Shown here in pieces: positions 47,047-60,665 of a stretch of 64,000 nucleotides of DNA. Numbering within the stretch: the first letter of the stretch is position 1; each line of letters opens with the position of its first letter. The position numbers and the translations under genes were made by a program. The stretch is from IMG/VR virus record IMGVR_UViG_3300042453_005404, positions 62,001 to 126,000 of that record; one strand, given 5' to 3'. Below the pieces are notes generated by a model. That model had not been told where the DNA came from. It saw only the letters and a list, made by a program, of their open reading frames with translations, and made no database searches.

Positions 47047-48117
47047 ATGAAGATCGGAATCGAAATCGAGTTCTACAGTCCCAAAAACATCACCGACACC
47101 ATTGCGGCTCTTCGTCGCAAGGTTCGTGGTCTTTCTATTGGTAGCTACGGTAGCTCTGGTTGGAAGATCGTGAGTGATGGTTCTCTTGCAACCATCGATA
47201 GCTTTCACGGCATGGAGCTTGTGTCTCCTGTGCTTGATACCGACAAGGCTGCTAACCTGCGCATGGTTCGCAAGGTGTGCGCTGCGTTGCAAGCTATGGG
47301 TAGCACGGTGAATAACTGCTGCGGTCTGCATGTTCATGTGGATGGTACCGATCTGTCGGTTGAGCAGATTAAGACGATTTTTCATCGCTATACCAAGTTT
47401 GAGGGTATGATCGATCTCATGGTTCCTGCTAATCGGCGTGGTACTAACGTGTACTATACCAAGGGTGGTACCAACATCATCAACAATGTGGAAAACTGTC
47501 AAACCATGAACGCTCTTATGCGTGTGCTGCCTGATCGTTACTACAAGGTGAACCTGTGTGCTCTGGGTCGTCATGGCACGATTGAGTTTCGGCAACACTC
47601 TGGGTCGATCAATGCGGATACCATTCTTAACTGGGTTGAGTTTCTTACTTCGTTTGTCGAAGCTTCCAAGATCACTCCTGCGGCTCCGCAACGTGCTCTT
47701 CGTGGTCGTCCGGCTTCTGGTACGGGCATGGCTGCTGGTTGCCGCAAGGTTTACGATGTGTTCATGGCTTCATACAACAACGGTGGTGGTACCTTGTACC
47801 TTGCCACGATTGCTAACCGTACCGGTCTTGCCATTAACAGCGTAAAGGTTGCAATCTCGACTCTTAAGACCAAGCACGGGATTGTGATTAAGAAGACTGC
47901 TGGACAGCAGCGTGGTGCTACCAACCCGATGTACACGATTGCAAACCCTCATGCGCAGCCTCGTTTGAATCCTGTGCGTTCTACTCGTAGCACTGCCAGT
48001 GCTCCCGCTACTCCTACTGACACGATTTGGCGTGGTGTTAGCAAGACTCTCAAGGCTTACTACGTCGAGCGCATTCAAGAGCTTTCGGGCTTCGGTGTTC
48101 AGAACGTTTCGCTGTGA
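47047..48117 (+). CDS. Putative amidoligase (Amidoligase_2/COOH-NH2 ligase) with C-terminal wHTH-like domain
   Basis: IGIEIEF, WKIVSDGSL, ELVSPVL, CGLHVHV, RYYKVN, TIEFRQHSG. Confidence 0.85.
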   Translation: MKIGIEIEFYSPKNITDTIAALRRKVRGLSIGSYGSSGWKIVSDGSLATIDSFHGMELVSPVLDTDKAANLRMVRKVCAALQAMGSTVNNCCGLHVHVDGTDLSVEQIKTIFHRYTKFEGMIDLMVPANRRGTNVYYTKGGTNIINNVENCQTMNALMRVLPDRYYKVNLCALGRHGTIEFRQHSGSINADTILNWVEFLTSFVEASKITPAAPQRALRGRPASGTGMAAGCRKVYDVFMASYNNGGGTLYLATIANRTGLAINSVKVAISTLKTKHGIVIKKTAGQQRGATNPMYTIANPHAQPRLNPVRSTRSTASAPATPTDTIWRGVSKTLKAYYVERIQELSGFGVQNVSL

Positions 48118-48449
48118 TGGTTGATGAAATGAACAATCTGCAACTTGGCAAAATGTATTTGGTTAAAGAGCTTTTCTGGCTTCTTTATCCAACGAAAGGT
48201 CTGGCAGGAGGGGCTGCGGACGGCTTCGGGGGGCATGGTTGGCGGTTGAAGAAGCTGACGACTGCTTATGAAACTGCAAAATGGGAGAGCGAAAGTTTCA
48301 ACTGCAATGTTGATGTTGTTGAAGAAAACACTTGCTTTGTTTTGCTTGAAGTAGACAACGGTTATTTCAAACTTCTTAACTCAAACGGTAACATTGGTTG
48401 GACTTGGGGTAGGGATTTCTTCGAGCATTTCGAACTTGTCAAGGAATAA
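48114..48449 (+). CDS. Hypervariable SH3-like protein, subfamily A copy 1
   Basis: LGKMYLVKE.FW.LYPTK-[variable]-CNV.VVEENTC.VLLE...GNIGW...FELVKE. Confidence 0.85.
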   Translation: MMVDEMNNLQLGKMYLVKELFWLLYPTKGLAGGAADGFGGHGWRLKKLTTAYETAKWESESFNCNVDVVEENTCFVLLEVDNGYFKLLNSNGNIGWTWGRDFFEHFELVKE

Positions 48450-48452
48450 GCA

Positions 48453-48767
48453 ATGAACAATCTGCAACTTGGTAAGATGTATTTGGTTAAAGAGTTTTTC
48501 TGGTTTCTTTTTCCAACAAAAGAACTAGCGGAGCGCCAGTGCAGGTGGTCGAGGGCGGGGGCCTCGACATCGGGGGCGACGGGGGTGGCAAAAGTGTTAA
48601 GCCAAAATTTTAAATGCAACATTTTTGTTGTTGAACCAAAGACTTGCTTTGTTTTGCTTGAAGTAGATGATGATTATTACAAGCTTCTTGACTCAAATGG
48701 TAACATTGGTTGGATTTTTAGTTGGGATTTCTCTGGTTGTTTCGAACTTGTAAAGGATTTATGTTGA
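48453..48767 (+). CDS. Hypervariable SH3-like protein A2
   Basis: Same framework; G-rich insert 48528-48587. Confidence 0.85.
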   Translation: MNNLQLGKMYLVKEFFWFLFPTKELAERQCRWSRAGASTSGATGVAKVLSQNFKCNIFVVEPKTCFVLLEVDDDYYKLLDSNGNIGWIFSWDFSGCFELVKDLC

Positions 48768-48798
48768 GAATATTTTCAGAGTATGATATACTTTTGAT
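48764..48798 (+). promoter_or_regulatory. Leaderless sigma70-like promoter (duplicated at 49431)
   Basis: TTGAGA-17-TATACT-6-ATG(48799). Confidence 0.8.
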
Positions 48799-49116
48799 AT
48801 GCTACAAATCGGTAAGATGTATTTGGTTAAAGAGTATTTCTGGTTTCTTTTTCCAACAAAAGAACTGGCGGTGGGGGCGATCGATCGCTTCGAGGGGCGG
48901 GCGTCGCAGGGCTGGGCGGCGACGGGGGCGGTGGTGGCAAAAGTGTTAAGCGAACGTTATAAATGCAACATTTTTGTTGTTGAACCAAAGACTTGCGTTG
49001 TTTTGCTTGAAATGGATGAAACCGAACATTGCTATAAGCTTCTTGATTGTAATGGAAACATTGGTTGGACTCGTTGTTGGAGTTTCGCCTCCTATTTCGA
49101 GCTTGTAAAGGAATAA
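48799..49116 (+). CDS. Hypervariable SH3-like protein A3
   Basis: Same framework; insert 48865-48936 is 57/72 GC. Confidence 0.85.
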   Translation: MLQIGKMYLVKEYFWFLFPTKELAVGAIDRFEGRASQGWAATGAVVAKVLSERYKCNIFVVEPKTCVVLLEMDETEHCYKLLDCNGNIGWTRCWSFASYFELVKE

Positions 49117-49122
49117 GCAACA

Positions 49123-49434
49123 ATGCAACTTGGTAAGATGTATTTGGTTAAAGATTGGTTTTGGTTTCTTTATCCAACAAAAGAACTGGCAAGGACGCCT
49201 GCGGCGAAGGCGAGCAGGGCGATGCGGCCCACGAGGGCGAGGGCGGGGATGGATGCGAAATGGTTGAGCCAAGAATTTAAATGCAACGTTGGTGTTGTTG
49301 AACCAAACACTTGCGTTGTGTTGCTTGAAGTAGATAATGGTTATTTTAAGCTTCTTGATTCGAATGGTAACATTGGTTGGATTATTTGTTGGAATGTCTC
49401 CAAAAATTTCGAACTTGTAAGGGATTTATGTTGA
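49123..49434 (+). CDS. Hypervariable SH3-like protein A4
   Basis: Same framework; insert 49191-49258. Confidence 0.85.
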   Translation: MQLGKMYLVKDWFWFLYPTKELARTPAAKASRAMRPTRARAGMDAKWLSQEFKCNVGVVEPNTCVVLLEVDNGYFKLLDSNGNIGWIICWNVSKNFELVRDLC

Positions 49435-49465
49435 GAATATTTTCAGAGTATGATATACTTTTGAT
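49431..49465 (+). promoter_or_regulatory. Leaderless sigma70-like promoter
   Basis: TTGAGA-17-TATACT-6-ATG(49466). Confidence 0.8.
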
Positions 49466-49711
49466 ATGCTACAAATCGGTAAGATGTATAAAGTTCCGTG
49501 GTATGTTGAAGCTGACGAGTACATAGCTGGACGACTGATTGAGCGAATCAAACTAAAAGATGGCGATCTTGTTGTTGTTGTTAGCATGGAAGAATACCGT
49601 ATGGGCGGGGAGATTCGTTGGGACACAAAACTGCTGACAGGTGACGGAAGACTTGTATACGTTTCGATATCGCAACCGGGGTCTGCATACTGGAAAAAAG
49701 CACATGAATAG
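49466..49711 (+). CDS. Divergent SH3-like family member
   Basis: MLQIGKMY...LKDGDLVVVV...KLLTGDG. Confidence 0.7.
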   Translation: MLQIGKMYKVPWYVEADEYIAGRLIERIKLKDGDLVVVVSMEEYRMGGEIRWDTKLLTGDGRLVYVSISQPGSAYWKKAHE

Positions 49712-50003
49712 AAATCTTCAAATCGGAAAGCTGTATAAAACACCTTGGAAGACTTCTTCTTACGGAGCTTACATCAAGTTTGATGATCATGGCATGGTGC
49801 CTGACTACAACAGAAGCATCGACCTTCCAGATGGCGCATATGTTGTTTTGCTTGAAGTTAACGTGAATAAAGCTGAATATTTCTATAACAATAGAAAAGC
49901 CAACACATACGTTCTTAAGGTTCTAACAGAGGATGGTGCTGTTGCATATGTTACGTGCACAGAAGCTGGTTTGGATTACTGGAAAAAGGTTGTTCGTCCA
50001 TAA
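49704..50003 (+). CDS. Divergent SH3-like family member
   Basis: LQIGKLY...VVLLEV...KVLTEDG; start at MNRNLQ. Confidence 0.7.
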   Translation: MNRNLQIGKLYKTPWKTSSYGAYIKFDDHGMVPDYNRSIDLPDGAYVVLLEVNVNKAEYFYNNRKANTYVLKVLTEDGAVAYVTCTEAGLDYWKKVVRP

Positions 50004-50017
50004 AACTTAGTTAATCC

Positions 50018-50052
50018 TTTAGATATTCATATTCTTATGGTATTCTATATAT
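50018..50052 (+). promoter_or_regulatory. Leaderless sigma70-like promoter
   Basis: TTTAGA-17-TATTCT-6-ATG(50053). Confidence 0.8.
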
Positions 50053-50427
50053 ATGAAGCAGAAGAAGGCTGTTGTTCGTCGCAAAGGTTCGGTTTCCAGC
50101 AAAGTCAAACAACTGGATTGGATCATGCAGTTTATCATTCGCATGAATCCTTGTGCGATTTGTGGTGGTTCCTTGGCTGATGGGTACAATCCTCGTTATC
50201 CGGGTAAAAGCATCACGCTGCATCATTCCATCGGAAGCCGTGAAGTTGACGATTGGGAGAATCTGGAGTATGTAGCTGGTATGGTGCTGTGTCATTCTAC
50301 ATGCCACAAGAGCTATCATTTGAAGCGCAGACACATGGATGCGGGCAAGGATGTAAACGAGGGCGAGGTTGCGATCATGGAAAGCAATATTGCCAAGGTT
50401 GTGAAGAAGCAGAGGAAAGTAAAATGA
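50053..50427 (+). CDS. HNH endonuclease-like protein
   Basis: CAICG...TLHH...LCH..CH..YH. Confidence 0.7.
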   Translation: MKQKKAVVRRKGSVSSKVKQLDWIMQFIIRMNPCAICGGSLADGYNPRYPGKSITLHHSIGSREVDDWENLEYVAGMVLCHSTCHKSYHLKRRHMDAGKDVNEGEVAIMESNIAKVVKKQRKVK

Positions 50428-50642
50428 ATCACACGATTGGAAAAATGCATCAGTTTGTAGCCGTTCAACTACCGATTTATAATAGGATCGGAGACGTTCC
50501 GTTTGCTTACTTGGTACAGAATGAAGTTGTTGTTTTTCTTTCGAAAACAGATAAATACGTAAAGGTACTATTTGACGATGGCACCGTTGGAATAGTGCCT
50601 TATTTTCCAGAACGTGATCATTGGGTTGAATACACCGGTTAG
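50424..50642 (+). CDS. Divergent SH3-like family member
   Basis: TIGKMH...VVVFLS...VKVLFDDG.VG; start at MNHTIG. Confidence 0.65.
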   Translation: MNHTIGKMHQFVAVQLPIYNRIGDVPFAYLVQNEVVVFLSKTDKYVKVLFDDGTVGIVPYFPERDHWVEYTG

Positions 50643-50656
50643 GAGAACGTAAAACA

Positions 50657-50986
50657 ATGTCCGAATATATTGAATCCGAGACAAACTGTTGGAACAAATC
50701 ACCAATGAAACAAGGTAAACTGTATTACGGGCTTTGTGATCGAGAGGTGATCGAAGAAAAGCTTTTACCTCATTTTTTTGATGCTCATGAGATCAATGAT
50801 GTGATTGAGGTAGTAGACGCAGCATCACCGGTTGTATTCTTGGAAAAGACAATCACAAGGCGAGAGGATGGATACGGTGGTAGAGAAAGGTATCAAACCT
50901 TTATAAAGATTCTTACACCTGCTGGAAATATTGGTTGGGTTGTTTGGTTTGAAGGCGATTGGAAGGAAGTAAAATCATGTCAATAA
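50657..50986 (+). CDS. Divergent SH3-like family member
   Basis: QGKLYY...VVFLEK...KILTPAGNIGWV. Confidence 0.7.
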   Translation: MSEYIESETNCWNKSPMKQGKLYYGLCDREVIEEKLLPHFFDAHEINDVIEVVDAASPVVFLEKTITRREDGYGGRERYQTFIKILTPAGNIGWVVWFEGDWKEVKSCQ

Positions 50987-51321
50987 CATTCTACGATCAG
51001 AACAATCCAGCAAAGTACAACGATGATGGAGATCAAATCGGTGGTGGTATCGAAGTAAACTTCGCAAACGGCAACGCATACACTGTGCTTTCTCTCATGG
51101 GTTTGTGCGGCAAAGATAATCCCGATCTTTGTGGAGAAATGAACGGTCACGACTTTCGTAAATGCGCATATCGTGCGTTAGCAACGTTGGATATGATAAA
51201 TGATGAAAGTCGATTTAACGTTGATCCCATCGATGTAGCACAACATTGGGGATACGCAAAAGAACGAATCAAACGGCTTTTAACGGTTTTTGCCGACGCT
51301 GAAACTGTTTGTTGGGGGTAA
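50977..51321 (+). CDS. Hypothetical protein
   Basis: EVNFANGNA..VL..MGL pattern; coupled start. Confidence 0.6.
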   Translation: MSITFYDQNNPAKYNDDGDQIGGGIEVNFANGNAYTVLSLMGLCGKDNPDLCGEMNGHDFRKCAYRALATLDMINDESRFNVDPIDVAQHWGYAKERIKRLLTVFADAETVCWG

Positions 51322-51323
51322 AG

Positions 51324-51486
51324 GTGGCATACTTTACCATAGGTAAACTGTATCAAAACGTTACAAAAAACGAAGCTTCTTGCTGATGATGGCACAGTTT
51401 ATCAGGCAGCGATTTTGAAAAACACACGTTACATACAAATCTGGTTTAAACCCGTTTCGTCATTTTCGGACATAGTTAAGTTATGA
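51324..51486 (+). pseudogene. Possible deleted/frameshifted SH3-like family remnant
   Basis: Frame 1 TIGKLYQ joins, after an A6 run (51365-70), frame 2 KLLADDGTVY; middle of the domain absent. Confidence 0.4.
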
Positions 51487-51828
51487 ATGATAAAAATATT
51501 GACAGGTGCCGAGCTAGTTCCCGGCAAAATGTATACTATTTGGGGGCGTTTGAATCGTGATACGTGGCCCGCATATCATCAACGACCAACTCTTCAATCA
51601 CCATCAACTGTTGCAACTGTTGCTCCATTGTTTCCATTGGAGCCATTTGTGTTTTTAGAACGCACGCCAAGTGAGTTTAGATGGAATGAAACCGATCCAA
51701 TGTATGACTACAAAATATTGACTTGTGACGGCGTTGTGGGCTGGCTATGCTTTCATGACGATGATTTGTCTGCTTTGGGTATTGGTTTTCGTGAATATGA
51801 TCCAAAAGACTTTGAAGTAAACCTTTAA
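51487..51828 (+). CDS. Divergent SH3-like family member
   Basis: LVPGKMY...FVFLE...KILTCDGVVGWL. Confidence 0.7.
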   Translation: MIKILTGAELVPGKMYTIWGRLNRDTWPAYHQRPTLQSPSTVATVAPLFPLEPFVFLERTPSEFRWNETDPMYDYKILTCDGVVGWLCFHDDDLSALGIGFREYDPKDFEVNL

Positions 51829-51868
51829 ATCGTAGCAACAACTTGATATACTAAAACTAGTTAAACCT

Positions 51869-51979
51869 ATGAGCATTCAAAGCATAATTTCTGCCACAGT
51901 GTTTGCAAGTGTTTTCTTTTTGTGGATATTCACTTGTCCAATGATAACACACAAAAAGTGTTGCTGTTGTAAAAACTAA
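51869..51979 (+). CDS. Small membrane peptide with Cys-rich tail (36 aa)
   Basis: Hydrophobic helix then KKCCCCKN; promoter TTTAAA(51824)-17-TATACT upstream. Confidence 0.4.
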   Translation: MSIQSIISATVFASVFFLWIFTCPMITHKKCCCCKN

Positions 51980-51995
51980 CAAAAGGAAGCAAATC

Positions 51996-52193
51996 GTGCG
52001 TAACTATGAAAAACAAAAAGATCTTGTTAATGCCAATCTTGTTGAAGGTGAGTTGATCAACTACAAAAACAAAGTTTGCAGAGTTTCTATATCCCGTGGT
52101 GGCCCTTTAGACAAACCAAAAGTAAGTGTTGTTTTAACTCCTATGCCTCAAATCACAATCACAGAAGACACAGAAATCATTGTTTCTACATAA
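51996..52193 (+). CDS. Hypothetical protein
   Basis: AAGGA RBS, GTG start. Confidence 0.5.
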   Translation: MRNYEKQKDLVNANLVEGELINYKNKVCRVSISRGGPLDKPKVSVVLTPMPQITITEDTEIIVST

Positions 52194-52363: not shown

Positions 52364-53503
52364 ATGATGAACGTTCACCCGGCTCTTCGTTTCTCGTTTG
52401 ACCATCTTCGCACGGCTCTTATGACCCGTGTGGATTCTGGTGCAATCAACATCACTCGCAAGGGTTCTCTGGCCCTTTTCAACTATTCCAAGGATTGTCA
52501 GTTTGAGCATCTTTGGGATGATTATACCATCATGGCCCGTGGTCTTATTCTCGACATGGAGAATGAGTCTATTGTGGCTCTTCCTTTTCCCAAGTTCTTC
52601 AATGCGTCGGAGAAGGAGGGTGCTAGTGTTGTCAAGTTTGATGCTCCCTTTGATGCGTATACCAAGATGGACGGATCGCTGGGTATCGTGTATTTCCACA
52701 ATGGTTCATGGCACGTTGCAACCCGTGGTTCGTTTACGTCCGAACAGTCTGTGTGGGCAGAGAAGTGGCTGCACGATAACCTCAAGCCTTATCACCAGCT
52801 TGATCAGAATGTGACATATCTTTGTGAGATTATCTATGACAGCAACCGTATTGTTATCAACTACCCTTTTGAGGGTTTGGTGATGCTTGGTGCTTATAAC
52901 CGTGTTACCGGCATTGAGCTTGACTATGATCGTGATTTGCGTCCGTTGTGTGAGCGTATCGGTATGATGCTTGCAGAGCGTCACCAGTTCACTTCATTTG
53001 TTGCTGCACAGGAGTTTGTCAAGACTCTTCCCGGCAACGAGGAAGGTTTCGTTATTCGTTTTCGGGATTCTGGCGAGCGTGTAAAGCTCAAGGGTTCTGA
53101 ATATTGCTCTTTGCACAAGATGATTAGCAACATTACTCCTTTGGCTATCTGGGAGCTTTTGTGTGCGGGTTACTCCATTGAAGATTACAAGAAGGCTTTG
53201 CCGGAAGAGTTTTGGGATGAGGTTGACGAGATTGTTGGTCATTTCCAGCGTCGTGCTGCTTGTGTTATGCTGGATGTTGTGAACCTTTATTCCGAGGTTT
53301 CTGATTTGTCTGACAAGGATCTTGGTTTGAAGCTGGCTGGCGAGTTCAAGCGTCGTGAGAATGCTTCGTTGCTGTTCCCTTATCGTAAGAAGGGAACGGC
53401 TTTGGTTCACGGTTTGGTGATGAAGTCTTTGCGGCCTACTGGAAACGTGATTGAGGGATATGTGCCGTCTGCCATGCTCCAGCGTTCTCAGTCGGAGGAA
53501 TGA
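52364..53503 (+). CDS. RNA ligase (T4 Rnl1-like)
   Basis: ARGLI...PFPKFFN, KMDGSLG, ATRGSF, EGFVI, VKLKG.EY. Confidence 0.9.
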   Translation: MMNVHPALRFSFDHLRTALMTRVDSGAINITRKGSLALFNYSKDCQFEHLWDDYTIMARGLILDMENESIVALPFPKFFNASEKEGASVVKFDAPFDAYTKMDGSLGIVYFHNGSWHVATRGSFTSEQSVWAEKWLHDNLKPYHQLDQNVTYLCEIIYDSNRIVINYPFEGLVMLGAYNRVTGIELDYDRDLRPLCERIGMMLAERHQFTSFVAAQEFVKTLPGNEEGFVIRFRDSGERVKLKGSEYCSLHKMISNITPLAIWELLCAGYSIEDYKKALPEEFWDEVDEIVGHFQRRAACVMLDVVNLYSEVSDLSDKDLGLKLAGEFKRRENASLLFPYRKKGTALVHGLVMKSLRPTGNVIEGYVPSAMLQRSQSEE

Positions 53504-53505: not shown

Positions 53506-53811
53506 ATGCAACTCGGCAAGATGTATTTGGTTAAAGAGCTTTTCTGGTTTCTTTATCCAACAAAAGAACGGGCGGAGTATGGGCGTGCGAGGGCGGCGTC
53601 CGTTGCGGCGATGGCGTGGCGGTGGGCGGCGAATAATGCAAAAGTGTTAAGCGAACGTTATAAATGCAACGTTTTTGTTGTTGAAGAAAACACTTGCGTT
53701 GTTTTGCTTGAAGTAGATGATGATTATTACAAGTTTCTTGATTGTAATGGAAACATTGGTTGGATTATTTGTCGGGATTTCTCCAACTATTTCGAGATTG
53801 CAAAGGAATAA
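53506..53811 (+). CDS. Hypervariable SH3-like protein A5
   Basis: Same framework; insert 53569-53631. Confidence 0.85.
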   Translation: MQLGKMYLVKELFWFLYPTKERAEYGRARAASVAAMAWRWAANNAKVLSERYKCNVFVVEENTCVVLLEVDDDYYKFLDCNGNIGWIICRDFSNYFEIAKE

Positions 53812-53817
53812 GCAACA

Positions 53818-54138
53818 ATGCAACTTGGTAAGATGTATTTGGTTAAAGAGCTTTTCTGGCTTCTCTTTCCAACAAAAGAAGTAGCGTGCGACCTTATGGC
53901 GATAGGCTGGGACAGCCCACTGGAGGCAACAGTGGAGAAGGGGCAGGCTTATCAAGAAGCAGACTATATAAGTGAACATATGTGTTGCGACGTTGCTGTG
54001 GTGGAAGAAAATACTTGTTTTGTGTTGCTTGAGCAAGATGAAAAGCTTTTCAAACTTCTTGATTGCAACGGTAACATTGGTTGGATATGGTGTAGGTGTT
54101 TGTCTTTTTCCAAGTATTTCGAACTTGTAAAGGAATAA
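53818..54138 (+). CDS. Hypervariable SH3-like protein A6
   Basis: Same framework; insert less GC-rich. Confidence 0.85.
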   Translation: MQLGKMYLVKELFWLLFPTKEVACDLMAIGWDSPLEATVEKGQAYQEADYISEHMCCDVAVVEENTCFVLLEQDEKLFKLLDCNGNIGWIWCRCLSFSKYFELVKE

Positions 54139-54144
54139 GCAACA

Positions 54145-54447
54145 ATGCAACTTGGTAAGATGTATTTGGTTAAAGAGTATTATTGGTTTATGTTTCCAAC
54201 AAAAGAACTAGCGGAGGCCATCGCCGCTGGACGGCGGGCGCTGGCCGCACTCGATGCGGGCGCTGCGGGACGGAGGGTGGCGAGCGAAGATTATAACTGC
54301 AACAACGTTTCTTTTGTTGAAGAAAACACTTACGTTGTTTTGCTTGAACAAGACAATGATTATATCAAAATTCTTGACTCAAATGGAAACATTGGTTGGA
54401 TTGTTTGTTGGGATTTTTCCGACTTTTTCGAACTTGTAAAGGAATAA
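54145..54447 (+). CDS. Hypervariable SH3-like protein A7
   Basis: Same framework; insert from 54211. Confidence 0.85.
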   Translation: MQLGKMYLVKEYYWFMFPTKELAEAIAAGRRALAALDAGAAGRRVASEDYNCNNVSFVEENTYVVLLEQDNDYIKILDSNGNIGWIVCWDFSDFFELVKE

Positions 54448-54453: not shown

Positions 54454-54750
54454 ATGCAACTTGGTAAGATGTATCGTTTTACAGAAAGAGCAAAACGAGC
54501 TTGCATAAGGTATGCAATCAAAAACCGTTGGCCTCTCACGTTCTCTTCCGAGGTTAGTCTCGCAAAAGGTCGAGTGCGGGCGCAATATCCATTGGATTCA
54601 TGCATTGTTGTGTTAGAGTCTCACGAAACAACAACTTCTGGAAAGCTTTTGTCTGGTAAAACATCACGCAGACTTAAGGTTTTACTTCCTGATGGTAAGA
54701 TTGGTACGATGTATGTGGATACAACAGAATGGGAACAGGTAACTGAATGA
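54454..54750 (+). CDS. Divergent SH3-like family member sharing only MQLGKMY with the array
   Basis: Identical upstream junction, then divergent; KVLLPDGKIG. Confidence 0.7.
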   Translation: MQLGKMYRFTERAKRACIRYAIKNRWPLTFSSEVSLAKGRVRAQYPLDSCIVVLESHETTTSGKLLSGKTSRRLKVLLPDGKIGTMYVDTTEWEQVTE

Positions 54751-55259: not shown

Positions 55260-55466
55260 ATGGGATACGTAAAAGACATGGTGCTTCACAAGCAAGAAGA
55301 GCTTGCTGGTGAGATTCACGAAGATGCTTTTCTCGCTTATCTGGAAGAGATGGAGCAGATTCAAAACAATCACATTCTGGCAGATCATGTGATTCTTAGC
55401 AATGGCAAGCGTTGCTATATTCAAGCGAACTGTTATCCTGCTGACGGTGTGTGTGAGTGCAAGTAA
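55260..55466 (+). CDS. Hypothetical protein
   Basis: MGYVKDM.. N-terminus; TAATG-coupled to A8. Confidence 0.6.
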   Translation: MGYVKDMVLHKQEELAGEIHEDAFLAYLEEMEQIQNNHILADHVILSNGKRCYIQANCYPADGVCECK

Positions 55467-55741
55467 TGCAACTCGGTAAGATGCATTTGGTTAAAGAGTG
55501 GTTTTGGTTTCTTTATCCAACAAAAGAAAAGACGTGGCGCTCGGGGCCAGCGGCGAGGGCGGATAATGCAAAATTGTTAAGCGAACATGTCCAATGCAAC
55601 GTTTTTGTTGTTGAACCAAACACTTGTGTTGTTTTGCTTGAAGTAGATAATGGTTATTTTAAGCTTCTTGATTCAAACGGAAACATTGGTTGGATTCGTT
55701 GTTGGAGTTTCGCCTCCTATTTCGAGCTTGTAAAGGAATAA
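55466..55741 (+). CDS. Hypervariable SH3-like protein A8
   Basis: Same framework; shortest insert 55529-55561. Confidence 0.85.
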   Translation: MQLGKMHLVKEWFWFLYPTKEKTWRSGPAARADNAKLLSEHVQCNVFVVEPNTCVVLLEVDNGYFKLLDSNGNIGWIRCWSFASYFELVKE

Positions 55742-55747
55742 GCAACA

Positions 55748-56047
55748 ATGCAACTTGGTAAGATGTATTTGGTTAAAGATTGGTTTTGGTTTCTTTATCC
55801 AACAAAAGAACTGGCGATGCGTGGGCGGAGCTCGGGGGAGGGGGCGATGACGCTGGCGAACGGGCGGCTGGGCGCAGAATGGTTGAGCCAAGAATTTAAA
55901 TGCAACGTTGGTGTTGTTGAACCAAACACTTGCTTTGTCTTGCTTGAAGTAGATGAAGTATATTTCAAGGTTCTTGATTGTAATGGAAACATTGGTTGGA
56001 CTTATTGCTTTGATTTCTCTGGTTATTTCGAACTTGTAAAGGAATAA
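55748..56047 (+). CDS. Hypervariable SH3-like protein A9
   Basis: Flanks identical to A4; insert 55816-55877. Confidence 0.85.
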   Translation: MQLGKMYLVKDWFWFLYPTKELAMRGRSSGEGAMTLANGRLGAEWLSQEFKCNVGVVEPNTCFVLLEVDEVYFKVLDCNGNIGWTYCFDFSGYFELVKE

Positions 56048-56051
56048 AGCA

Positions 56052-56351
56052 ATGAACGATCTTCAACTCGGTAAGATGTATTTGGTTAAAGAGTGGTTTT
56101 GGTTTCTTTATCCAACAAAAGAACTGGCGGCGGGGTTCTCGTCGCCGTCGAGGGCGGAGTGGTGGTGTAATGCAAAAGTGTTAAGCGAACGTTATAAATG
56201 CAACGTTTTTGTTGTTGAACCAAACACTTGCGTTGTTTTGCTTGAAGTAGATAATGGTTATTTTAAGCTTCTTGATTCAAACGGTAACATTGGTTGGATA
56301 TGGTGTAGGTGTTTGGCTTTTTCCAAGCATTTCGAACTTGTCAAGGAATAA
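56052..56351 (+). CDS. Hypervariable SH3-like protein A10
   Basis: Insert 56124-56165, 13/14 codons NNG. Confidence 0.85.
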   Translation: MNDLQLGKMYLVKEWFWFLYPTKELAAGFSSPSRAEWWCNAKVLSERYKCNVFVVEPNTCVVLLEVDNGYFKLLDSNGNIGWIWCRCLAFSKHFELVKE

Positions 56352-56355
56352 AGCA

Positions 56356-56688
56356 ATGCAACTTGGTAAGATGTATTTGGTTAAAGAGTATTGTTGGTTT
56401 CTTTATCCAACAAAAGAACTGGCCTCGACGACGGGGCCACGGTGGTCGAGCGTGAGGCGGTGGCCCTCCGACGAGGAGCGCACGGTGGCTTATCGAGATG
56501 CAAAATGGTTGAGCCAAGCATTTAAATGCAACGTTGGTGTTGTTGAACCAAAAACTAGTTTTGTCTTGCTTGAACAAGACAAGGATCATTTCAAGGTTCT
56601 TGATTCAAACGGAAACATTGGTTGGATTCGTAGCGATGATTTTTCGAAAAATTTCAAGGTTTTGAATGAAAAGAAGAATAACCTTTAG
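56356..56688 (+). CDS. Hypervariable SH3-like protein A11
   Basis: Start at MQLGKMY (56356); insert from 56419. Confidence 0.85.
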   Translation: MQLGKMYLVKEYCWFLYPTKELASTTGPRWSSVRRWPSDEERTVAYRDAKWLSQAFKCNVGVVEPKTSFVLLEQDKDHFKVLDSNGNIGWIRSDDFSKNFKVLNEKKNNL

Positions 56689-56718
56689 ATATGTCAAATA
56701 TTTTGGTATTATAGAAGT
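56684..56718 (+). promoter_or_regulatory. Leaderless sigma70-like promoter
   Basis: TTTAGA-17-TATTAT-6-ATG(56719). Confidence 0.8.
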
Positions 56719-57477
56719 ATGAAGCGAACGATTGTAATCGGTGATGTACATGGTTGCCTTGCAGAGCTCAAGGAGCTTGTTGACGAGGTTGGATATGTTC
56801 GTGGTGAGGATCGATTGATTCTTGCTGGTGATCTTGTGGATCGTGGTGTAGATTCTGCTGGAGTTGTTCGTTATGCAATGAAGATTGGTGCCGAGGCTGT
56901 TTGCGGCAATCATGACAACAAGCTTTTGCGTCGTTCCAAGCACCTTGCACGGCAGCGTAGCAATCCCGCATACGTCAACCCGATGAAGCCTTGCGAAGAC
57001 CAAGAAAACACTCTTGCGAGTCTTGGTGATGCAGAGTTGGCGTGGCTTGGATCTTTGCCTTATCATATCAAGCTTGACGAGTTTAACGCTGTTGTGGCTC
57101 ATGCTGGCATTGTTCCCGGTGTTCCTCTTGTTCGTCAACGTGATGAAGCGTTTATGATGGTTCGTTACGTTGATAAGGATAACGGCAAGATGAAGCATAT
57201 GGTTATGCCGGGATATCTTCGTCCAGAAAACAGTGATTACTGGGCAGATAAGTTTGACAGCAGCTTTGATGTTATCTTTGGCCACAACGTTGTTGGATTG
57301 AAGGATATCAAGGTTTGGGAAAACACTAACGGTGGTCGTTGCTTTGGTATCGATACTGGTTGTGTGTTTGGAGGACGCTTGAGCGCCCTTGTTATGCAAG
57401 CTCGCAGCAAGCCTTATGAGGTTATTCAAGTACAAGCACACAAGCAACACTGCGTTTCTGATCTATTTTCAGAGTGA
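56719..57477 (+). CDS. Metallophosphoesterase (ApaH/PrpA/Pnkp-phosphatase-like)
   Basis: GDVHG, GDLVDRG, GNHD, HAG, FGH, DTGC. Confidence 0.9.
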   Translation: MKRTIVIGDVHGCLAELKELVDEVGYVRGEDRLILAGDLVDRGVDSAGVVRYAMKIGAEAVCGNHDNKLLRRSKHLARQRSNPAYVNPMKPCEDQENTLASLGDAELAWLGSLPYHIKLDEFNAVVAHAGIVPGVPLVRQRDEAFMMVRYVDKDNGKMKHMVMPGYLRPENSDYWADKFDSSFDVIFGHNVVGLKDIKVWENTNGGRCFGIDTGCVFGGRLSALVMQARSKPYEVIQVQAHKQHCVSDLFSE

Positions 57478-57489
57478 AAAGAGCATAAT

Positions 57490-57883
57490 ATGGAAAACAA
57501 ACATAAGCACTTTACAGTATTCAACAATCGATGGTTTATGCTGTTTCGAGAGCAAGCAGGAGTGATTAGCGAAAGCCCTTGTTGGGTTTTGTTTTACGAC
57601 TGTTATTCGCATTACAACGAATCTTTGATCAAGCTTTTGATTGAAGCTGCAAGAGAATACAAAAGCGATAGACACCTAGCAATGTAAGTCAAAAATGAAC
57701 AACGACGAAAAGCAAAAACTTATCGACGATTTCGAAAAAGCTATTAGCGAGATTCGTGTGTTGCGTTACACTTCTCCAGATGAAGAGCTAAAAGGTCTTA
57801 GAGTTCATTTGTTTGAGAATGAATGGGATAGGTTGGAGCACACTATTAGAGAACTAAGAAAGAATGAAACCGAAGAAAGGTAA
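57490..57883 (+). CDS. Two small hypothetical proteins (57490-57687, 57695-57883)
   Basis: Consecutive co-directional ORFs. Confidence 0.5.
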
Positions 57884-58148
57884 GCTTTACACACTAGAGC
57901 TTAAATGGAACACAGATCCTGCGAATATCAGATCTGTTGCTGTATGGAATCGCAGACTTGATGTTGGTGACTTTATGGATAAATCATTAGTGATAGGCAG
58001 AATCGAATACAACAAAGATATGTTTATCTTTTTGGAAGATGGAACAAACGGATTTAGCCAAAAGAGTCCAAAGATTTTGACCAGCGATGGAGTTGTTGGG
58101 TATATTGTGCCAAACTATGATATCTGTTCGATGAAACGGGTTAAGTAG
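57864..58148 (+). CDS. Divergent SH3-like family member
   Basis: KKGKLYTL...FIFLEDG...KILTSDGVVGYI. Confidence 0.7.
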   Translation: MKPKKGKLYTLELKWNTDPANIRSVAVWNRRLDVGDFMDKSLVIGRIEYNKDMFIFLEDGTNGFSQKSPKILTSDGVVGYIVPNYDICSMKRVK

Positions 58149-58161
58149 AAAGAAGACGACT

Positions 58162-59364
58162 ATGAGCGAACGTTATCAGATTATAATCAAGGCTGGGGAG
58201 CATACTTTTCATTTCAAAACCAAGACAAGGGTTGGGGAGTTTTGGAACTTCTCAGAGGAGATGAAGGAGCATATTGATTGGGAGCAGATGGCTATTGGAT
58301 TGGACAAAAAGACCAAGGAAGTTTTGGACTCTGTGAGTTGTCCTAAGTGTAAGTCTAGCACACAGGAAACATTTATGGAGGGTCAGTATCTTGTTCCTTC
58401 TAGTGACAGGGATGCTATTATCAAGGCTTGCACTAAATGTCAGTGGTCTAGGTTGGAGCGACTATGAGTGATATAAAGTTTCCAGTTGTATCAAAAGAAA
58501 TTATTGACAAAGTTTTTACTTCTGATGATGGATGGACTACTGTATATGAGGGTCCAACCATCGTAAGCAGTGCAAGTATTATGCCACAGATTTATGTGCC
58601 GCTTCAAGTTTCTCATATATTCAAGAAGGAAGATAAAGAATGAAACGCTATTATGCCAAGGCTGACACATGGTTCAAGGAAGGAACGGAAGCGTTTAGAG
58701 AAGAAGAGATGTTTCCTTATGGTAGTTTGACTGATGGTGAAACTGGAGAGAAAACGGGCTCAGCGATTTATCGTGGGATTTACGTTATTGGATCTGGTGG
58801 CAGCTATCTTGATAAATCATACAAAGAAGGGGAAGAAGTTGAGATGCGAGAACATTGCTCGGACGATGAGTTTCTTGTGGTAGAGGAATAGGTTATGGGA
58901 ATAAATGGGGATACCAAGGATATTGGTTGGATTCAATGTAGCCAATGTGGGTGGGGTTGTGAAGTACATCGTTCAGAAGTTGAGATTGGGGATTATGTAG
59001 ATCGGCAATCATGTCCTGATTGTGGTCTTGGGCCATGTGAGATTGATTGGGATTATCCAGATGGTAAGGGTTGGGTAGCAGAAAAAGTTTGACTTATTGA
59101 TAATGGTATGATAGTTTAAACCTATCGAAAGCAAAGGAAAATATGAAAGCAACGTTTAAGTCATTTGTCGAAGGCGAGAAGCGATTCATTGTAGTAGGTG
59201 AGCCTCATGTATATCAGAATGGATTCCTTGTCACTTGTATTGATACAAGCACTGGAGAAACCGAAAGCAAAACTATCGCAAGCTCTGAGAGACTTGATCT
59301 ATGTGAGTTCGAACTAAAATGCCTTGGTAAAGTTGTTTGGGAAAAGAAGCTTATCCCAGTATGA
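58162..59364 (+). CDS. Run of five small hypothetical proteins (58162-58467 Zn-ribbon, 58464-58643, 58640-58891, 58895-59092 Zn-ribbon, 59143-59364)
   Basis: Coupled ORFs; CxxC pairs in two; 58464-58643 read manually. Confidence 0.55.
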
Positions 59365-59756
59365 CAGAGATAGAAGAAGAAAGAATGTGGCTCAAGTGTT
59401 TGGAGCTGGAACGAGAGAATAAACGTCTTCGTGAAATAATGAACATCGGATCGCTTTATACAGTGAAGAAGTATTTTTGGTTGCTTTTTCCAACAAAAGC
59501 CCTCACCGTGGGTGACGAACTGCACGCCGATGGCCACGGCCACGCCATCCCCTTCGCCGCCTTCGCCTCCATCGCCGCCGATTATTGGAGCAGACGATAC
59601 AACTGTGAAGTTACTTATTTTTGTCCTGATTCAATCGTTGTTTTCCTTGAAGAAGATGGAAATTACAAGAAAGTTCTGACTTCAGATGGAAAGATTGGTT
59701 GGATTTGGTTTGCTGAAGAATACTACAACGATTGCTTTGAGGAAGTAAATCCATGA
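59361..59756 (+). CDS. Hypervariable SH3-like protein, subfamily B copy 1 (with 26-aa N-terminal extension; core starts 59439)
   Basis: MNIGSLY.VKK.FW.LFPTK-[C-rich insert 59499-59579]-YWS...CEV.YF.PDS..VFLEEDG...KVLTSDGKIGW. Confidence 0.85.
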   Translation: MTEIEEERMWLKCLELERENKRLREIMNIGSLYTVKKYFWLLFPTKALTVGDELHADGHGHAIPFAAFASIAADYWSRRYNCEVTYFCPDSIVVFLEEDGNYKKVLTSDGKIGWIWFAEEYYNDCFEEVNP

Positions 59757-60052
59757 ACATTGGAAGCCTTTATAGGGTTAAGAAGTTTTATTGGTTGCTT
59801 TTTCCAACAAAAGAAATCGCCGCTGTAGCAGAACACCCCGCCTCCTCCCCCAGCGCCGCCGCCCTCGCCGCCGCCAGCGCCTATTGGAGCGGCCAGCTGA
59901 ACTGTGAAGTAACTTGTTTTTCTCCTGATTCCATTATTGTATTTCTTGAAGAAGATGGGAAATACAAGAAGGTTCTGACTTCTGAAGGAAGAATCGGATG
60001 GACTTGGTTTATTGAATCATATAACGAATGCTTTGAGGAAGTAAATCCATGA
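59753..60052 (+). CDS. Hypervariable SH3-like protein B2
   Basis: 16 consecutive NNC codons at 59834-59881. Confidence 0.85.
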   Translation: MNIGSLYRVKKFYWLLFPTKEIAAVAEHPASSPSAAALAAASAYWSGQLNCEVTCFSPDSIIVFLEEDGKYKKVLTSEGRIGWTWFIESYNECFEEVNP

Positions 60053-60363
60053 ACATTGGATCGCTTTATACAGTGAAGAAGTATTTTTGGTTTCTTTTTT
60101 CAACAAAAGCCGTCGCCGCCGCCGCATCCGACCCACCGTCCACCGCCGCATCCGACGCACCGTCCGCCGCCGCCGCCGGAGAAGCCGCTGCTTATTTGAG
60201 CAGACGATACGACTGTGAAGTTACTTATTTTTCTCCTGATTCCATCGTTGTTTTCCTTGAAAATGATGGAAAACTCAAGAAAGTATTGACTTCTGATGGA
60301 AAGATTGGTTGGACTTGGTTTAGTGAAACCTATAACGAATGCTTTGAGGAAGTAAATCCATGA
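60049..60363 (+). CDS. Hypervariable SH3-like protein B3
   Basis: C-rich insert with an internal 24-nt duplication. Confidence 0.85.
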   Translation: MNIGSLYTVKKYFWFLFSTKAVAAAASDPPSTAASDAPSAAAAGEAAAYLSRRYDCEVTYFSPDSIVVFLENDGKLKKVLTSDGKIGWTWFSETYNECFEEVNP

Positions 60364-60665
60364 ACATTGGATCGCTTTATACAGTGAAGAAGTGGTCTTG
60401 GTCACTTTTTCCAACAAAGGAAACTGCCGCCGCCGCCGCCGCAAGCAGCCCCGCCGCCGCAGGAGCCGCTCCCGACGCCGCTCCCGCCGCTGATTATTGG
60501 AGCAAACAGTTAAACTGCAATGTAACCTACTTTTCTCCTGATTCCTATATTGTCTTCTTGGAAGAAGATACGAAGTTCAAGAAAGTTCTTACTTCTACTG
60601 GAAAGCTTGGTTGGGTTTGGTTTGATGAAAGTTATAATCATTGTTTTGAGGAAGTATCGTCGTGA
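60360..60665 (+). CDS. Hypervariable SH3-like protein B4
   Basis: (GCC)5 run and GCCGCTCCC duplication in the insert. Confidence 0.85.
   Translation: MNIGSLYTVKKWSWSLFPTKETAAAAAASSPAAAGAAPDAAPAADYWSKQLNCNVTYFSPDSYIVFLEEDTKFKKVLTSTGKLGWVWFDESYNHCFEEVSS

What the first reader, a model, noticed from the sequence alone, without database searches (positions are those of the whole stretch)
48114..60665. Repertoire of 15 SH3-like paralogues with a hypervariable GC-rich loop at a fixed site (candidate new diversification system)
Seen: 11 subfamily-A genes in three arrays (48114-49434, 53506-54447, 55466-56688) and 4 subfamily-B genes (59439-60665). They share an AT-rich framework (GKMYLVKE.FWFL.PTKE / C.V.VVE.NTC.VLLE.D / KLLD.NGNIGW / FELVKE) that is interrupted after the anchor CCAACAAAAG by a segment that differs in every copy. 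The segment is roughly 11-30 codons, always in frame and stop-free, and mostly ~80% GC (A3: 57/72) in a ~35-40% GC genome. Inference: the V.VLE...KV...DG..GW pattern resembles bacterial SH3 domains, which would place the variable segment in the RT-loop position, the ligand-specificity loop. The result would be a fixed scaffold with a diversified loop, like an antibody CDR. Arrays sit behind early-type promoters, so a role in binding or decoying host (for example defence) proteins is plausible but unproven.
Basis: partly seen in the sequence, partly recalled or inferred. Interest (0 to 1): 0.95.

Follow-up and report, generated by a model that had tools for sequence, protein, structure and literature searches.

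The report
Phage SH3-like gene family, GC-rich loops
A jumbo phage from freshwater metagenomes carries over 20 tandem copies of a small, previously undescribed SH3-like protein, and each copy has its own GC-rich loop that is inherited stably and reshuffled by recombination, so this is a germline repertoire and not an active hypermutation system.

Summary
There are 15 paralogues at the stated coordinates, plus at least 7 more on the same 260-kb contig. Each has an AT-rich framework interrupted at one site by a 33-75 nt core of 54-77% GC that is unalignable between copies.

AlphaFold models are confident (pLDDT 90-91). They match only SH3/SH3b folds, and the variable part is a helix-loop-helix inserted at the RT-loop region.

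The family is large (331 clusters), found only in metagenomes, unannotated and absent from isolated phages.

The "diversification system" reading is not supported:
- No core has a template copy.
- The anchor is not a DNA signal.
- Orthologous cores in relatives 92-100% identical in flanking DNA are 99-100% identical.
- Among close variants, cores vary no more than frameworks (15% vs 13% of columns).

Diversity comes from array gain and loss, chimeric genes and recombination inside the conserved frameworks, plus rare core-only remodelling or replacement.

The cores look like decayed triplet tracts: GCG in subfamily A (67% G at silent sites) and GCC in subfamily B (75% C), against 7-8% in the framework. 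Slippage signatures are present.

This is a novel family with unusual composition. Its function is unknown.

The parts
48114..48449 (+). A1 gene (ORF from GTG 48114; ATG 48129 is the likelier start). Variable core 48207-48275.
   Evidence: Core is 68/69 identical in relative L006.
48453..48767 (+). A2 gene. Variable core 48531-48587.
   Evidence: In L006 this array position holds an A7-type gene.
48799..49116 (+). A3 gene. Variable core 48871-48936.
49123..49434 (+). A4 gene. Variable core 49192-49254.
   Evidence: AF2 model. Core has 1 difference in L010 and L016. The same core sits in a different framework in P0152.
53506..53811 (+). A5 gene (an alternative ATG lies at 53500). Variable core 53575-53637.
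   Evidence: Core is remodelled or replaced in L011, L010 and L020 while the N-terminal framework is identical.
53818..54138 (+). A6 gene. Variable core 53887-53958, the least GC-rich at 0.54.
54145..54447 (+). A7 gene. Variable core 54214-54270.
   Evidence: Compared with L019 the gene is identical except for a +1/-1 compensated frameshift and substitutions inside the core.
55466..55741 (+). A8 gene. Variable core 55535-55567, the shortest.
   Evidence: Identical in L019. The position holds other paralogues in L007 and L008.
55748..56047 (+). A9 gene. Variable core 55817-55873.
   Evidence: The position holds other paralogues in L007 and L008.
56052..56351 (+). A10 gene. Variable core 56130-56171.
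   Evidence: Core is 42/42 identical in L007, L008 and L009. A recombination breakpoint lies in the first ~25 nt of the gene.
56356..56688 (+). A11 gene. Variable core 56425-56499.
   Evidence: The whole gene is 100% identical in L007, L008 and L009.
59439..59756 (+). B1 gene (ORF is open from 59337; start uncertain). Variable core 59508-59576.
   Evidence: Identical in L023. A 9-nt tandem repeat lies at 59551-59579.
59753..60052 (+). B2 gene (ATGA stop/start overlap with B1). Variable core 59822-59875.
   Evidence: One difference in L027. Period-3 and period-12 repeats.
60049..60363 (+). B3 gene. Variable core 60118-60186.
   Evidence: AF2 model. Degenerate GCC x23 and a 24-nt duplication at 93% match.
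60360..60665 (+). B4 gene. Variable core 60429-60488.
   Evidence: Degenerate GCC x21.7 and an 18-nt repeat. In L025 and L027 the alignment to the window begins at 60484, so a different N-terminus and core are joined to this C-terminus.
49466..49711 (+). Distant SH3-like paralogue without a GC core.
   Evidence: Shared G-K-M-Y start and V-V-V...G-x-x-V motifs seen by eye. No significant HMM hit.
50657..50986 (+). Distant SH3-like paralogue without a GC core.
   Evidence: Weak family-HMM hit at 50888-50947, E 0.006.
51487..51828 (+). Distant SH3-like paralogue without a GC core.
   Evidence: Weak family-HMM hit at 51685-51753, E 0.0045.
54454..54750 (+). Divergent paralogue directly after A7. 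It has the same MQLGKMY start but no GC core.
   Evidence: No Pfam or PHROG hit.
57864..58148 (+). Distant SH3-like paralogue without a GC core.
   Evidence: Motifs seen by eye. No family-level hit.
60662..60925 (+). Distant SH3-like paralogue directly after B4, without a GC core.
   Evidence: Weak family-HMM hit at 60776-60913, E 0.0095.

Best explanation
This is a large, previously undescribed multigene family of ~100-aa phage proteins.

Structure: each protein is a small SH3-like barrel. A helix-loop-helix element is inserted in the RT-loop region (shown by prediction and fold matches).

Origin of the cores (inferred): the inserted element is encoded by a decayed, slippage-prone alanine-codon triplet tract. 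The founder codon is GCG in subfamily A and GCC in subfamily B and its relatives. That explains three things together: the GC island, the opposite G and C strand bias of the two subfamilies, and the fact that length changes stay in frame. Amino-acid-changing positions have drifted further from the founder codon than silent positions. This fits relaxed or diversifying selection on the loop.

Behaviour of the cores (shown): once formed, each core is a stable heritable cassette. Repertoires differ between strains mainly in three ways. Arrays expand and contract. Unequal crossing-over makes chimeric genes. Homologous recombination or gene conversion inside the conserved frameworks moves cores between frameworks and array positions and keeps the frameworks homogenised. 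Core-only remodelling or replacement is rare and episodic.

No dedicated mutator is involved.

Function (inferred, unproven): a germline-encoded repertoire of binding modules. The loop would set partner specificity, and the genes are probably expressed with the neighbouring nucleic-acid-metabolism and host-takeover genes.
For: Family and anatomy.

Fold: pLDDT 91.1 and 90.2. All top Foldseek matches are SH3/SH3b, with prob 0.9-1.0 and TM by target 0.52-0.67.

Triplet origin:
- GCG is 42/295 codons in A cores and GCC is 37/112 in B cores. Codons within one change of the founder number 130 vs 90 +/- 7 (A) and 71 vs 40 +/- 4 (B).
- At four-fold sites, A cores are 67% G against 7% in the framework, and B cores are 75% C against 8%.
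- Ala codons are 72% GCG in A cores and 81% GCC in B cores.
- Adjacent identical codons number 147 vs 120.9 +/- 8.6, reached by 3/1000 shuffles.
- TRF finds degenerate GCC x22-23 and 9-24-nt tandem duplications in B cores.
- Alleles differ by in-frame 6-, 18- and 21-nt indels.

Stability:
- Orthologous cores are 99-100% identical.
- In 10 clusters of close variants, 15.3% of core columns vary against 12.6% of framework columns, p=0.29.

Recombination:
- A breakpoint lies in the first ~25 nt of A10.
- Arrays have 8 and 9 copies in L008 and L025 against 4 in the window, next to DNA that is 98.7-100% identical.
- The L010 gene at 6001 has an A5-like N-terminus and an A7-like C-terminus, read by eye from the alignments.
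- The A4 core occurs in a different framework in P0152.
- Frameworks are less diverged than non-family flanks, 0-0.8% against 1.2-6.6%.
Against: - A-type cores are not detectable as tandem repeats, so for them the founder-tract model rests on codon statistics only.
- Four comparisons show cores 32-38% different beside frameworks that are 0-0.8% different, and in one case non-family flanks only 0.5% different. That is too much for ordinary neutral divergence. It needs either cassette import by recombination or a saltatory mutational event, and the data do not separate these.
- Why silent sites stay so GC-rich in a 40% GC genome over the apparent age of the paralogues is explained only qualitatively.
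- There is no functional evidence at all.
- Only about 100 kb of the 260-kb contig was examined for accessory enzymes.
Confidence: 0.6

Rival explanations
1. A dedicated, non-DGR targeted diversification process. A break or nick at the framework/core junction would be followed by strand-specific, GC-biased untemplated or error-prone synthesis, similar to junctional N-addition. It would act episodically to create new cores.
For: - The compositional boundary at a fixed site is sharp.
- Silent-site bias is extreme and strand-specific, G in A-type and C in B-type. Genome-wide mutational asymmetry cannot explain this, because both subfamilies lie on the same strand a few kb apart.
- Clustered changes are confined to the core in otherwise identical genes, including a +1/-1 frameshift pair.
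- Neighbouring genes include DNA ligase, RNA ligase, exonuclease and an amidoligase, plus an ORF with an HNH-like motif seen by eye. This is circumstantial.
Against: - Most orthologous cores are unchanged between strains.
- The anchor codons vary synonymously across the family, so no conserved DNA target exists.
- There is strong three-base periodicity with a founder-codon excess and tandem duplications.
- Some family members have AT-rich cores.
- No candidate enzyme was identified.
Confidence: 0.1
2. Cores are simply old and evolve at ordinary, unconstrained rates. The contrast with the framework would come entirely from gene conversion homogenising the frameworks and from balancing or diversifying selection keeping distinct cores, with no raised mutability of the core.
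For: - Frameworks are more alike than non-family flanks.
- Framework variation among close variants consists of paralogue-type swaps.
- The same core occurs in different frameworks.
- Cores are stable in orthologues.
Against: - It does not explain GC-rich silent sites or codon homogeneity.
- It does not explain the excess of tandem codon duplicates and higher-order repeats.
- It does not explain the in-frame indels between close alleles.

This rival overlaps largely with the best explanation and differs only on slippage-driven mutability.
Confidence: 0.2
3. The GC island has a nucleic-acid-level role, such as an mRNA structure, a translational pause site, or a recombination or packaging signal. 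The peptide it encodes would be incidental.
For: It is a GC island at a fixed distance, about 60 nt, from each start codon.
Against: - RNA folds are no more stable than dinucleotide shuffles, with z from -0.7 to +2.0, and B cores fold worse than shuffles.
- Cores share no motif beyond composition.
- Core length varies from 33 to 75 nt.
- The segment is modelled as an ordered helix-loop-helix.
Confidence: 0.04
4. A diversity-generating retroelement (DGR) diversifies the loops.
For: There are hypervariable segments at a fixed site in a phage protein family.
Against: - No template-repeat copy of any core exists in about 100 kb of the contig.
- There are over 22 unrelated cores of different lengths.
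- Alleles differ by indels and non-adenine changes.
- The target fold is SH3-like, not C-type lectin.

The hallmarks of DGRs are an invariant template region copied to the variable region with infidelity at adenines (PMC6182149, abstract).
Confidence: 0.01
5. Assembly artefact: chimeric joins across repeated frameworks create false core/framework combinations.
For: Frameworks share long identical stretches that short-read assemblers can mis-join. Some 'chimeric' genes could be of this kind.
Against: - The same cores recur base-for-base in independent assemblies from different samples.
- The GC-core architecture is present in hundreds of clusters from JGI, ENA, NCBI and Logan.
Confidence: 0.03

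Closest known systems
Bacterial/phage SH3b domains (Pfam SH3_3, as in NlpC/P60 endopeptidases and phage endolysins) and eukaryotic SH3 domains
   Same: - The predicted fold matches these domains.
- All best Foldseek matches are SH3/SH3b.
- There are sub-threshold sequence echoes of SH3_3 and TIGR04211 over the C-terminal strands.
- The variable element lies at the loop that sets ligand specificity in SH3 domains.
   Different: - No profile reaches its threshold.
- These are stand-alone ~100-aa proteins, not a module of a lysin.
- A ~30-40-residue helix-loop-helix is inserted.
- Copies are arranged in tandem arrays of 3-9.
- The ligand is unknown.
Low-complexity regions / alanine-repeat expansions that diversify duplicated genes through replication slippage
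   Same: - Codon-homogeneous Ala-rich tracts.
- In-frame length changes and tandem duplications.
- Rapid divergence between paralogues beside conserved domains.

LCRs expand quickly through replication slippage (PMC3523016, abstract). Repeat expansions have been linked to diversification of duplicated transcription factors (PMC4540963, title and abstract).
   Different: - The system is a phage.
- The tract sits inside a folded domain at one fixed loop.
- It is strongly decayed into diverse sequence.
- Two subfamilies use the two strands of the same CGG/CCG repeat class.
Cassette-type gene-conversion families (pilE/pilS, vlsE and similar contingency families; my own knowledge)
   Same: - Conserved flanks around variable cassettes.
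- Recombination in the conserved parts reshuffles the cassettes.
- Repertoires are strain-specific.
   Different: - There is no single expression site with silent donors.
- Every copy is a complete gene with its own start. The end of one gene (GTAAAGGAATAA) supplies an AAGGA about 9 nt before the next ATG, and B genes overlap as ATGA.
Diversity-generating retroelements
   Same: A fixed scaffold with a hypervariable ligand-facing segment in a phage protein.
   Different: - No template repeat.
- Variable length.
- No adenine-specific pattern.
- Cores are stable between strains.
- The scaffold is different.
Germline V-gene repertoires of adaptive immune receptors (analogy only)
   Same: Many tandem copies of one scaffold, each with its own specificity loop, and copy number that varies between haplotypes.
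   Different: There is no evidence of any somatic or within-infection diversification step.

Membership tests
SH3 / SH3b domain (Pfam SH3_3 PF08239) | Sequence profile match above the curated gathering score | tested here: not met
   Best scores are 14.5 and 13.6 bits against a cut-off of 27 (E 0.04-0.08), in 2 of 10 proteins. TIGR04211 scores 14 bits against 65. A profile search against PDB sequences found nothing.
SH3 / SH3b domain (Pfam SH3_3 PF08239) | Five-stranded SH3 barrel topology with RT loop, distal hairpin and a 3-10 turn before the last strand | tested here: inconclusive
   The models are confident. Every top Foldseek match is SH3/SH3b, with prob 0.9-1.0, rmsd 2-3 A over 42-47 columns, and TM by target 0.60-0.67 for full-length alignments to 63-64-residue SH3 domains. 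But E-values are 0.014-0.7. The tools give no residue-level superposition.
SH3 / SH3b domain (Pfam SH3_3 PF08239) | Binding of a peptide or peptidoglycan ligand through the RT / n-Src loop surface | not testable with these tools
   Needs biochemistry.
Diversity-generating retroelement target | A near-identical template repeat elsewhere in the element | tested here: not met
   No non-self match of 25 nt or more for any of the 15 cores in the window plus L002 and L003, about 100 kb of the contig.
Diversity-generating retroelement target | Variation restricted to template-adenine positions, with fixed length | tested here: not met
   Cores are 33-75 nt long. Alleles differ by 1-21-nt indels and by G/C changes.
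Diversity-generating retroelement target | A reverse transcriptase gene nearby | not tested
   No search aimed at reverse transcriptases was run. About 160 kb of the contig was not held.
Slippage-derived coding low-complexity region | Codon homogeneity, meaning one synonymous codon dominates | tested here: met
   Ala codons are GCG 93/129 in A cores and GCC 220/270 in B cores, while the frameworks use mostly GCA and GCT.
Slippage-derived coding low-complexity region | Tandem repetition and in-frame length polymorphism | tested here: met
   Adjacent identical codons number 147 vs 120.9 +/- 8.6. TRF arrays are found in B cores only. Alleles differ by 6-, 18- and 21-nt indels. A-type cores fall below TRF detection.
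Phase-variable contingency locus | Repeat-length changes that switch the reading frame on and off | tested here: not met
   All 121 near-full-length copies in the window and loci are in frame. The one +1 change seen is compensated 20 nt later.
Cassette gene-conversion (expression site plus silent donors) | Silent, promoterless partial cassettes donating to one expressed gene | tested here: not met
   Every copy is a complete ORF with its own start codon.
Cassette gene-conversion (expression site plus silent donors) | Recombination in conserved flanks that moves variable cores | tested here: met
   The A4 core occurs in another framework. There are chimeric genes and breakpoints in frameworks. 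Frameworks are more alike than the flanks.

The most novel reading that the evidence does not exclude
The cores are made by a dedicated mechanism not yet described in phages. A site-directed break at the framework/core junction would be repaired by strand-specific, GC-biased untemplated or error-prone synthesis. It would act rarely, giving variable-length, stop-poor, in-frame inserts that are then inherited stably. The opposite G and C bias of the two subfamilies would reflect which strand is extended.
Probability: 0.1. Interest if true: 0.9.

Novelty: new variant of a known kind. Interest (0 to 1): 0.55.

Why it matters
The family is large, with 331 clusters at 50% identity. It has no entry in Pfam, PHROGs, NCBIfam or PADLOC and no relative among about 50,700 deposited phage genomes. 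Yet one jumbo phage invests more than 20 genes in it, and near-identical strains differ in how many copies they carry and which ones.

That pattern is typical of genes caught in an arms race: a fixed scaffold, a private loop per copy, and fast turnover of the repertoire. It makes the family a good candidate for host-interaction or counter-defence functions that can be tested by expression and pull-down.

The extreme within-gene switch at silent sites, from 64% T to 67% G or 75% C, is also a clean natural example of how a triplet tract can seed new protein sequence inside a folded domain.

Tried and rejected
- Near-identity search of the 15-kb region against phage genomes: no match.
- tblastn of copy A4 against phage genomes: no match.
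- Pfam, PHROGs, NCBIfam, PADLOC and PDB-sequence profile searches: nothing above threshold.
- DGR: rejected because no template repeat exists and the cores carry indels.
- Mosaic assembly of cores from a shared pool: rejected. The longest common substrings match codon-shuffled controls except for allelic pairs.
- RNA structure in the cores: rejected, z from -0.7 to +2.0.
- Anchor as a DNA recognition signal: rejected. Pro is CCA 75 / CCT 25 and Lys is AAA 68 / AAG 28, like other invariant residues.
- Frame-hopping as a main generator of new peptides: rejected. Shared 11-mers between cores lie in the same frame 188 times and in a different frame 8 times. Cores do have few out-of-frame stops, 1.7-2.0% against 3.8-9.4% in the framework.
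- GC-biased gene conversion: considered and rejected by inference, because it is not strand-specific and would not give G-only and C-only silent sites in the two subfamilies.
- Continuous hypermutation: rejected by the orthologue and cluster comparisons.
- Synonymous against non-synonymous changes in allelic cores: 1 vs 7, compared with 15 vs 27 in frameworks. The numbers are too small to conclude anything.
- Host identification: only two MAG-binned contigs (Rhodoferax, Halieaceae), and they look like phage DNA.
- Literature searches found no description of this family.
- The first genome-collection scan failed because the broad alignment had no conserved stretch.

Full report
**1. The observation**

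The region holds 15 complete ORFs of 91-111 codons, all on the + strand, at the coordinates given. A1-A4 lie at 48114-49434, A5-A7 at 53506-54447, A8-A11 at 55466-56688 and B1-B4 at 59439-60665. They align as one family with 18 invariant columns. Identity to the first copy is 51-66% within subfamily A and 31-36% for subfamily B.

The anchor CCAACAAAAG is exact in 12 of 15 copies and occurs only once elsewhere in the 64 kb. After it comes a segment that is in frame and stop-free in every copy. It is 18-32 codons long between the PTK motif and a conserved Ser. Its GC is 0.54-0.77, against 0.31-0.37 for the rest of the gene and 0.40 for the window. A 100-nt composition profile shows one GC spike per gene. 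Almost all 60-nt windows of >=68% GC in the window are these cores.

In the most similar paralogue pairs the flanking framework is 86-98% identical at DNA level. The 33-75 nt core aligns no better than shuffled sequence. A6 is the weakest case, and "80% GC" holds only for local peaks.

**2. Where the window comes from and how big the family is**

The window is positions 62001-126000 of IMG/VR contig UViG_3300042453_005404, which is 260,466 bp long. It is a myovirus-like jumbo phage. The window carries a baseplate wedge protein, a head closure protein, glycosyltransferases, DNA and RNA ligases, an amidoligase and a NinI-like phosphatase. It has no close relative among deposited phages.

The same contig has 3 more copies just beyond the window end and 4 before its start. 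A profile search of 1.84 billion representative proteins found 331 clusters at E <= 1e-3 and 145 at E <= 1e-10. Nearly all are ~100 aa long and have the same architecture, including a variable Ala/Thr/Gly/Arg/Pro-rich segment at the same place. All named relatives are "hypothetical protein", none has a Pfam domain, and the sources are almost entirely metagenomes.

No Pfam, PHROG, NCBIfam, PADLOC or PDB-sequence match reaches threshold. tblastn against 50,697 phage genomes finds nothing.

**3. Fold**

AlphaFold2 with family alignments gives confident models for an A-type copy (A4: pLDDT 91.1, pTM 0.83) and a B-type copy (B3: pLDDT 90.2, pTM 0.81). Both have the same layout:
- two N-terminal strands;
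- a short helix;
- a loop of lower confidence (block means 76-85);
- a long helix;
- four strands, with one more strand at the C-terminus (preceded by a short helical turn in the A4 model).

All best Foldseek matches in the PDB and in BFVD are SH3 or SH3b domains. They include NlpC/P60 enzymes, the phiSM101 endolysin, and the Hck, Lck, Lyn and Eps8 SH3 domains. Probabilities are 0.9-1.0 but E-values are weak, 0.014-0.7. Full-length alignments of the 103-residue model to 63-64-residue SH3 domains have TM by target 0.60-0.67. That implies a single ~40-residue insertion after the first strands, which is the RT-loop region.

It is not proven residue by residue. The insert is an ordered helix-loop-helix and not a floppy loop.

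**4. Is the loop being actively diversified?**

The metagenome scan returned 34 loci, several from strains about 92-100% identical to the window.

Where a gene is orthologous (framework 99-100% identical), its core is too:
- A1: 68/69 identical.
- A10: 42/42 identical in three loci.
- A11: 75/75 identical in three loci.
- A8: 33/33, B1: 69/69, B2: 53/54 identical.
- A4: 62/63 identical, although its framework differs by 3-4% in L010 and L016.

Where the "same" position has a different core (A2, A8, A9), the framework also drops to paralogue level, 0.66-0.91. A different paralogue sits there. The breakpoint next to A10 lies in the first ~25 nt of the gene, inside the conserved N-terminal framework.

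Array size differs between strains. L008 has 8 copies where the window has 4, although the downstream 2,044 nt are 100% identical. L025 has 9 copies upstream of DNA 98.7% identical to the window. Chimeric genes occur: the L010 gene has an A5-like N-terminus and an A7-like C-terminus, read by eye from the alignments. The exact A4 core is found inside a different framework in P0152.

In ten 90%-identity clusters with 5-11 variants each, from many samples, 15.3% of core columns vary against 12.6% of framework columns (odds ratio 1.25, p=0.29). Framework variation consists largely of paralogue-type swaps such as exchanged C-terminal tails.

So cores are stable, inherited identities. Frameworks recombine around them.

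**5. The exceptions**

Four comparisons show genes identical outside the core but strongly changed within it:
- L009:4205 vs L007:5540: 13 mismatches and 4 small indels.
- L012:1126 vs L013:2742: a 21-nt indel plus 5 changes.
- Window A5 vs L011:770 and L010:6001.
- Window A7 vs L019:163: a +1/-1 compensated frameshift plus substitutions.

Against local flanks the contrast is large. Core divergence is 32-38%, framework 0-0.8% in two pairs, and non-family flank 0.5-6.6%. Frameworks being more alike than the flanks indicates homogenisation by recombination or gene conversion. The core differences are too large for ordinary divergence in the L011/L010 case.

They need either import of a diverged cassette by recombination in the frameworks, a process that is demonstrated here, or a saltatory local event. 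I cannot separate these two.

**6. What the cores are made of**

The bias is at nucleotide level, not just amino-acid level. At four-fold degenerate sites, A-type cores are 67% G where their own framework is 7% G and 64% T. B-type cores are 75% C where their framework is 8% C. This is measured over 74 distinct cores from many loci.

Ala codons are 72% GCG in A cores and 81% GCC in B cores. The frameworks use mostly GCA and GCT. Codons within one change of the founder codon are strongly over-represented. GCG and GCC are the two strands of one repeat class (CGG/CCG), each read in the alanine frame. A different founder codon therefore explains why the two subfamilies, which lie on the same strand a few kb apart, have opposite G/C skew. 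A genome-wide strand asymmetry or GC-biased gene conversion would not explain this.

Slippage signatures are present:
- There is an excess of adjacent identical codons, 147 vs 120.9 +/- 8.6.
- B cores contain degenerate GCC x22-23 arrays and 9-, 12-, 18- and 24-nt tandem duplications.
- Alleles differ by in-frame indels.
- Internal duplications are seen in relatives.

A-type cores are too decayed for TRF to detect.

The founder base is retained better at position 3 (0.61 in A, 0.72 in B) than at positions 1-2 (0.32-0.55). Under the founder model this means amino-acid-changing sites moved faster than silent ones. That fits diversifying or relaxed selection, and it is an inference. A few members have AT-rich cores, so the GC state is not obligatory.

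**7. Alternatives tested**

- No core has a second, template-like copy in ~100 kb of the contig. Lengths differ and changes are not adenine-specific. A DGR, defined by a template region copied with adenine infidelity (PMC6182149), is therefore excluded for the sequence held.
- Cores are not mosaics of shared pieces.
- Cores do not fold as RNA better than shuffles.
- The anchor is not a DNA signal, because its codons vary synonymously across the family like those of other invariant residues.
- Frame-hopping is rare.
- Promoter-like sites are not enriched, 33 vs 27.6 +/- 5.4. A 55-nt element with a good promoter-like site is repeated after A2 and A4.

**8. Verdict**

The "new diversification system" is not supported.

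The best account is a novel phage multigene family of SH3-like proteins. Its RT-loop insert derives from a decayed alanine triplet tract, is inherited stably, and is reshuffled by array turnover and recombination within the conserved frameworks. It is a germline repertoire and not a hypermutator.

Slippage-driven low-complexity regions that diversify duplicated genes are known (PMC3523016, PMC4540963). The phage setting, the fixed structural site, the paired GCG and GCC subfamilies and the cassette-like behaviour make this a new variant of that kind.

A rare dedicated mechanism is not excluded (about 10%). Function is unknown. My inference is a set of binding modules with loop-encoded specificity.

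Noticed in passing
window 48735-48805 and 49402-49472: A near-identical element of about 55 nt follows A2 and A4. It covers the gene end (…FELVKDLC), a promoter-like TTGAGA-17-TATACT with an extended -10, and TTGATATGCT. The motif TTGNTATRCT occurs 10 times in the window against 1.4 expected, and half the matches are on the minus strand inside structural genes.
   Followed up: partly
window 49466-49711, 49641-50003, 50253-50642, 50657-50986, 51487-51828, 54454-54750, 57864-58148, 60662-60925: Further small ORFs between the arrays have the same G-K-[ML]-Y … V-[VF]-L-E … G-x-[IV]-G-W pattern but no GC-rich core. Several give weak hits to the family HMM (E 0.002-0.01). The SH3-like superfamily in this phage is therefore wider than the 22 clear copies.
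   Followed up: partly
L003:6534-6634 (same contig, upstream of the window): A C-rich stretch (CATCAACACCCGCTCCATC…) appears to be repeated twice in tandem, judged by eye. It lies in what looks like a short ORF or non-coding DNA and is unrelated to the family.
   Followed up: no
window 44414-44486: This is the only GC island of >=68% in the window that is not a family core. It lies in a 72-codon ORF of unknown function.
   Followed up: no
window 56030-56060 and 59750-60365: Genes in the arrays look translationally coupled. The conserved gene end GTAAAGGAATAA supplies an AAGGA about 9 nt before the next ATG in A arrays. B genes overlap as ATGA.
   Followed up: no
window 50053-50427: A small ORF with Cys pairs and an HNH-like His motif sits between the first array and the RNA ligase. 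It may be a homing-type endonuclease.
   Followed up: no
L040 and L041 (MAG contigs labelled Halieaceae and Rhodoferax): These are the only hits in 185,579 species genomes. L041 (49% GC) has one clear family member with a GC core and several distant SH3-like ORFs. It looks like phage DNA binned into a MAG, so it is only a weak host lead.
   Followed up: partly
P0286 (cluster of the L002:10331-type copy): One source names a 104-aa family member 'ABC-type thiamine transport system substrate-binding protein'. This is almost certainly a spurious annotation.
   Followed up: no
window 3114-5607: Two adjacent, overlapping glycosyltransferase genes (PHROG 2170) lie upstream of the tail and baseplate genes.
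   Followed up: no
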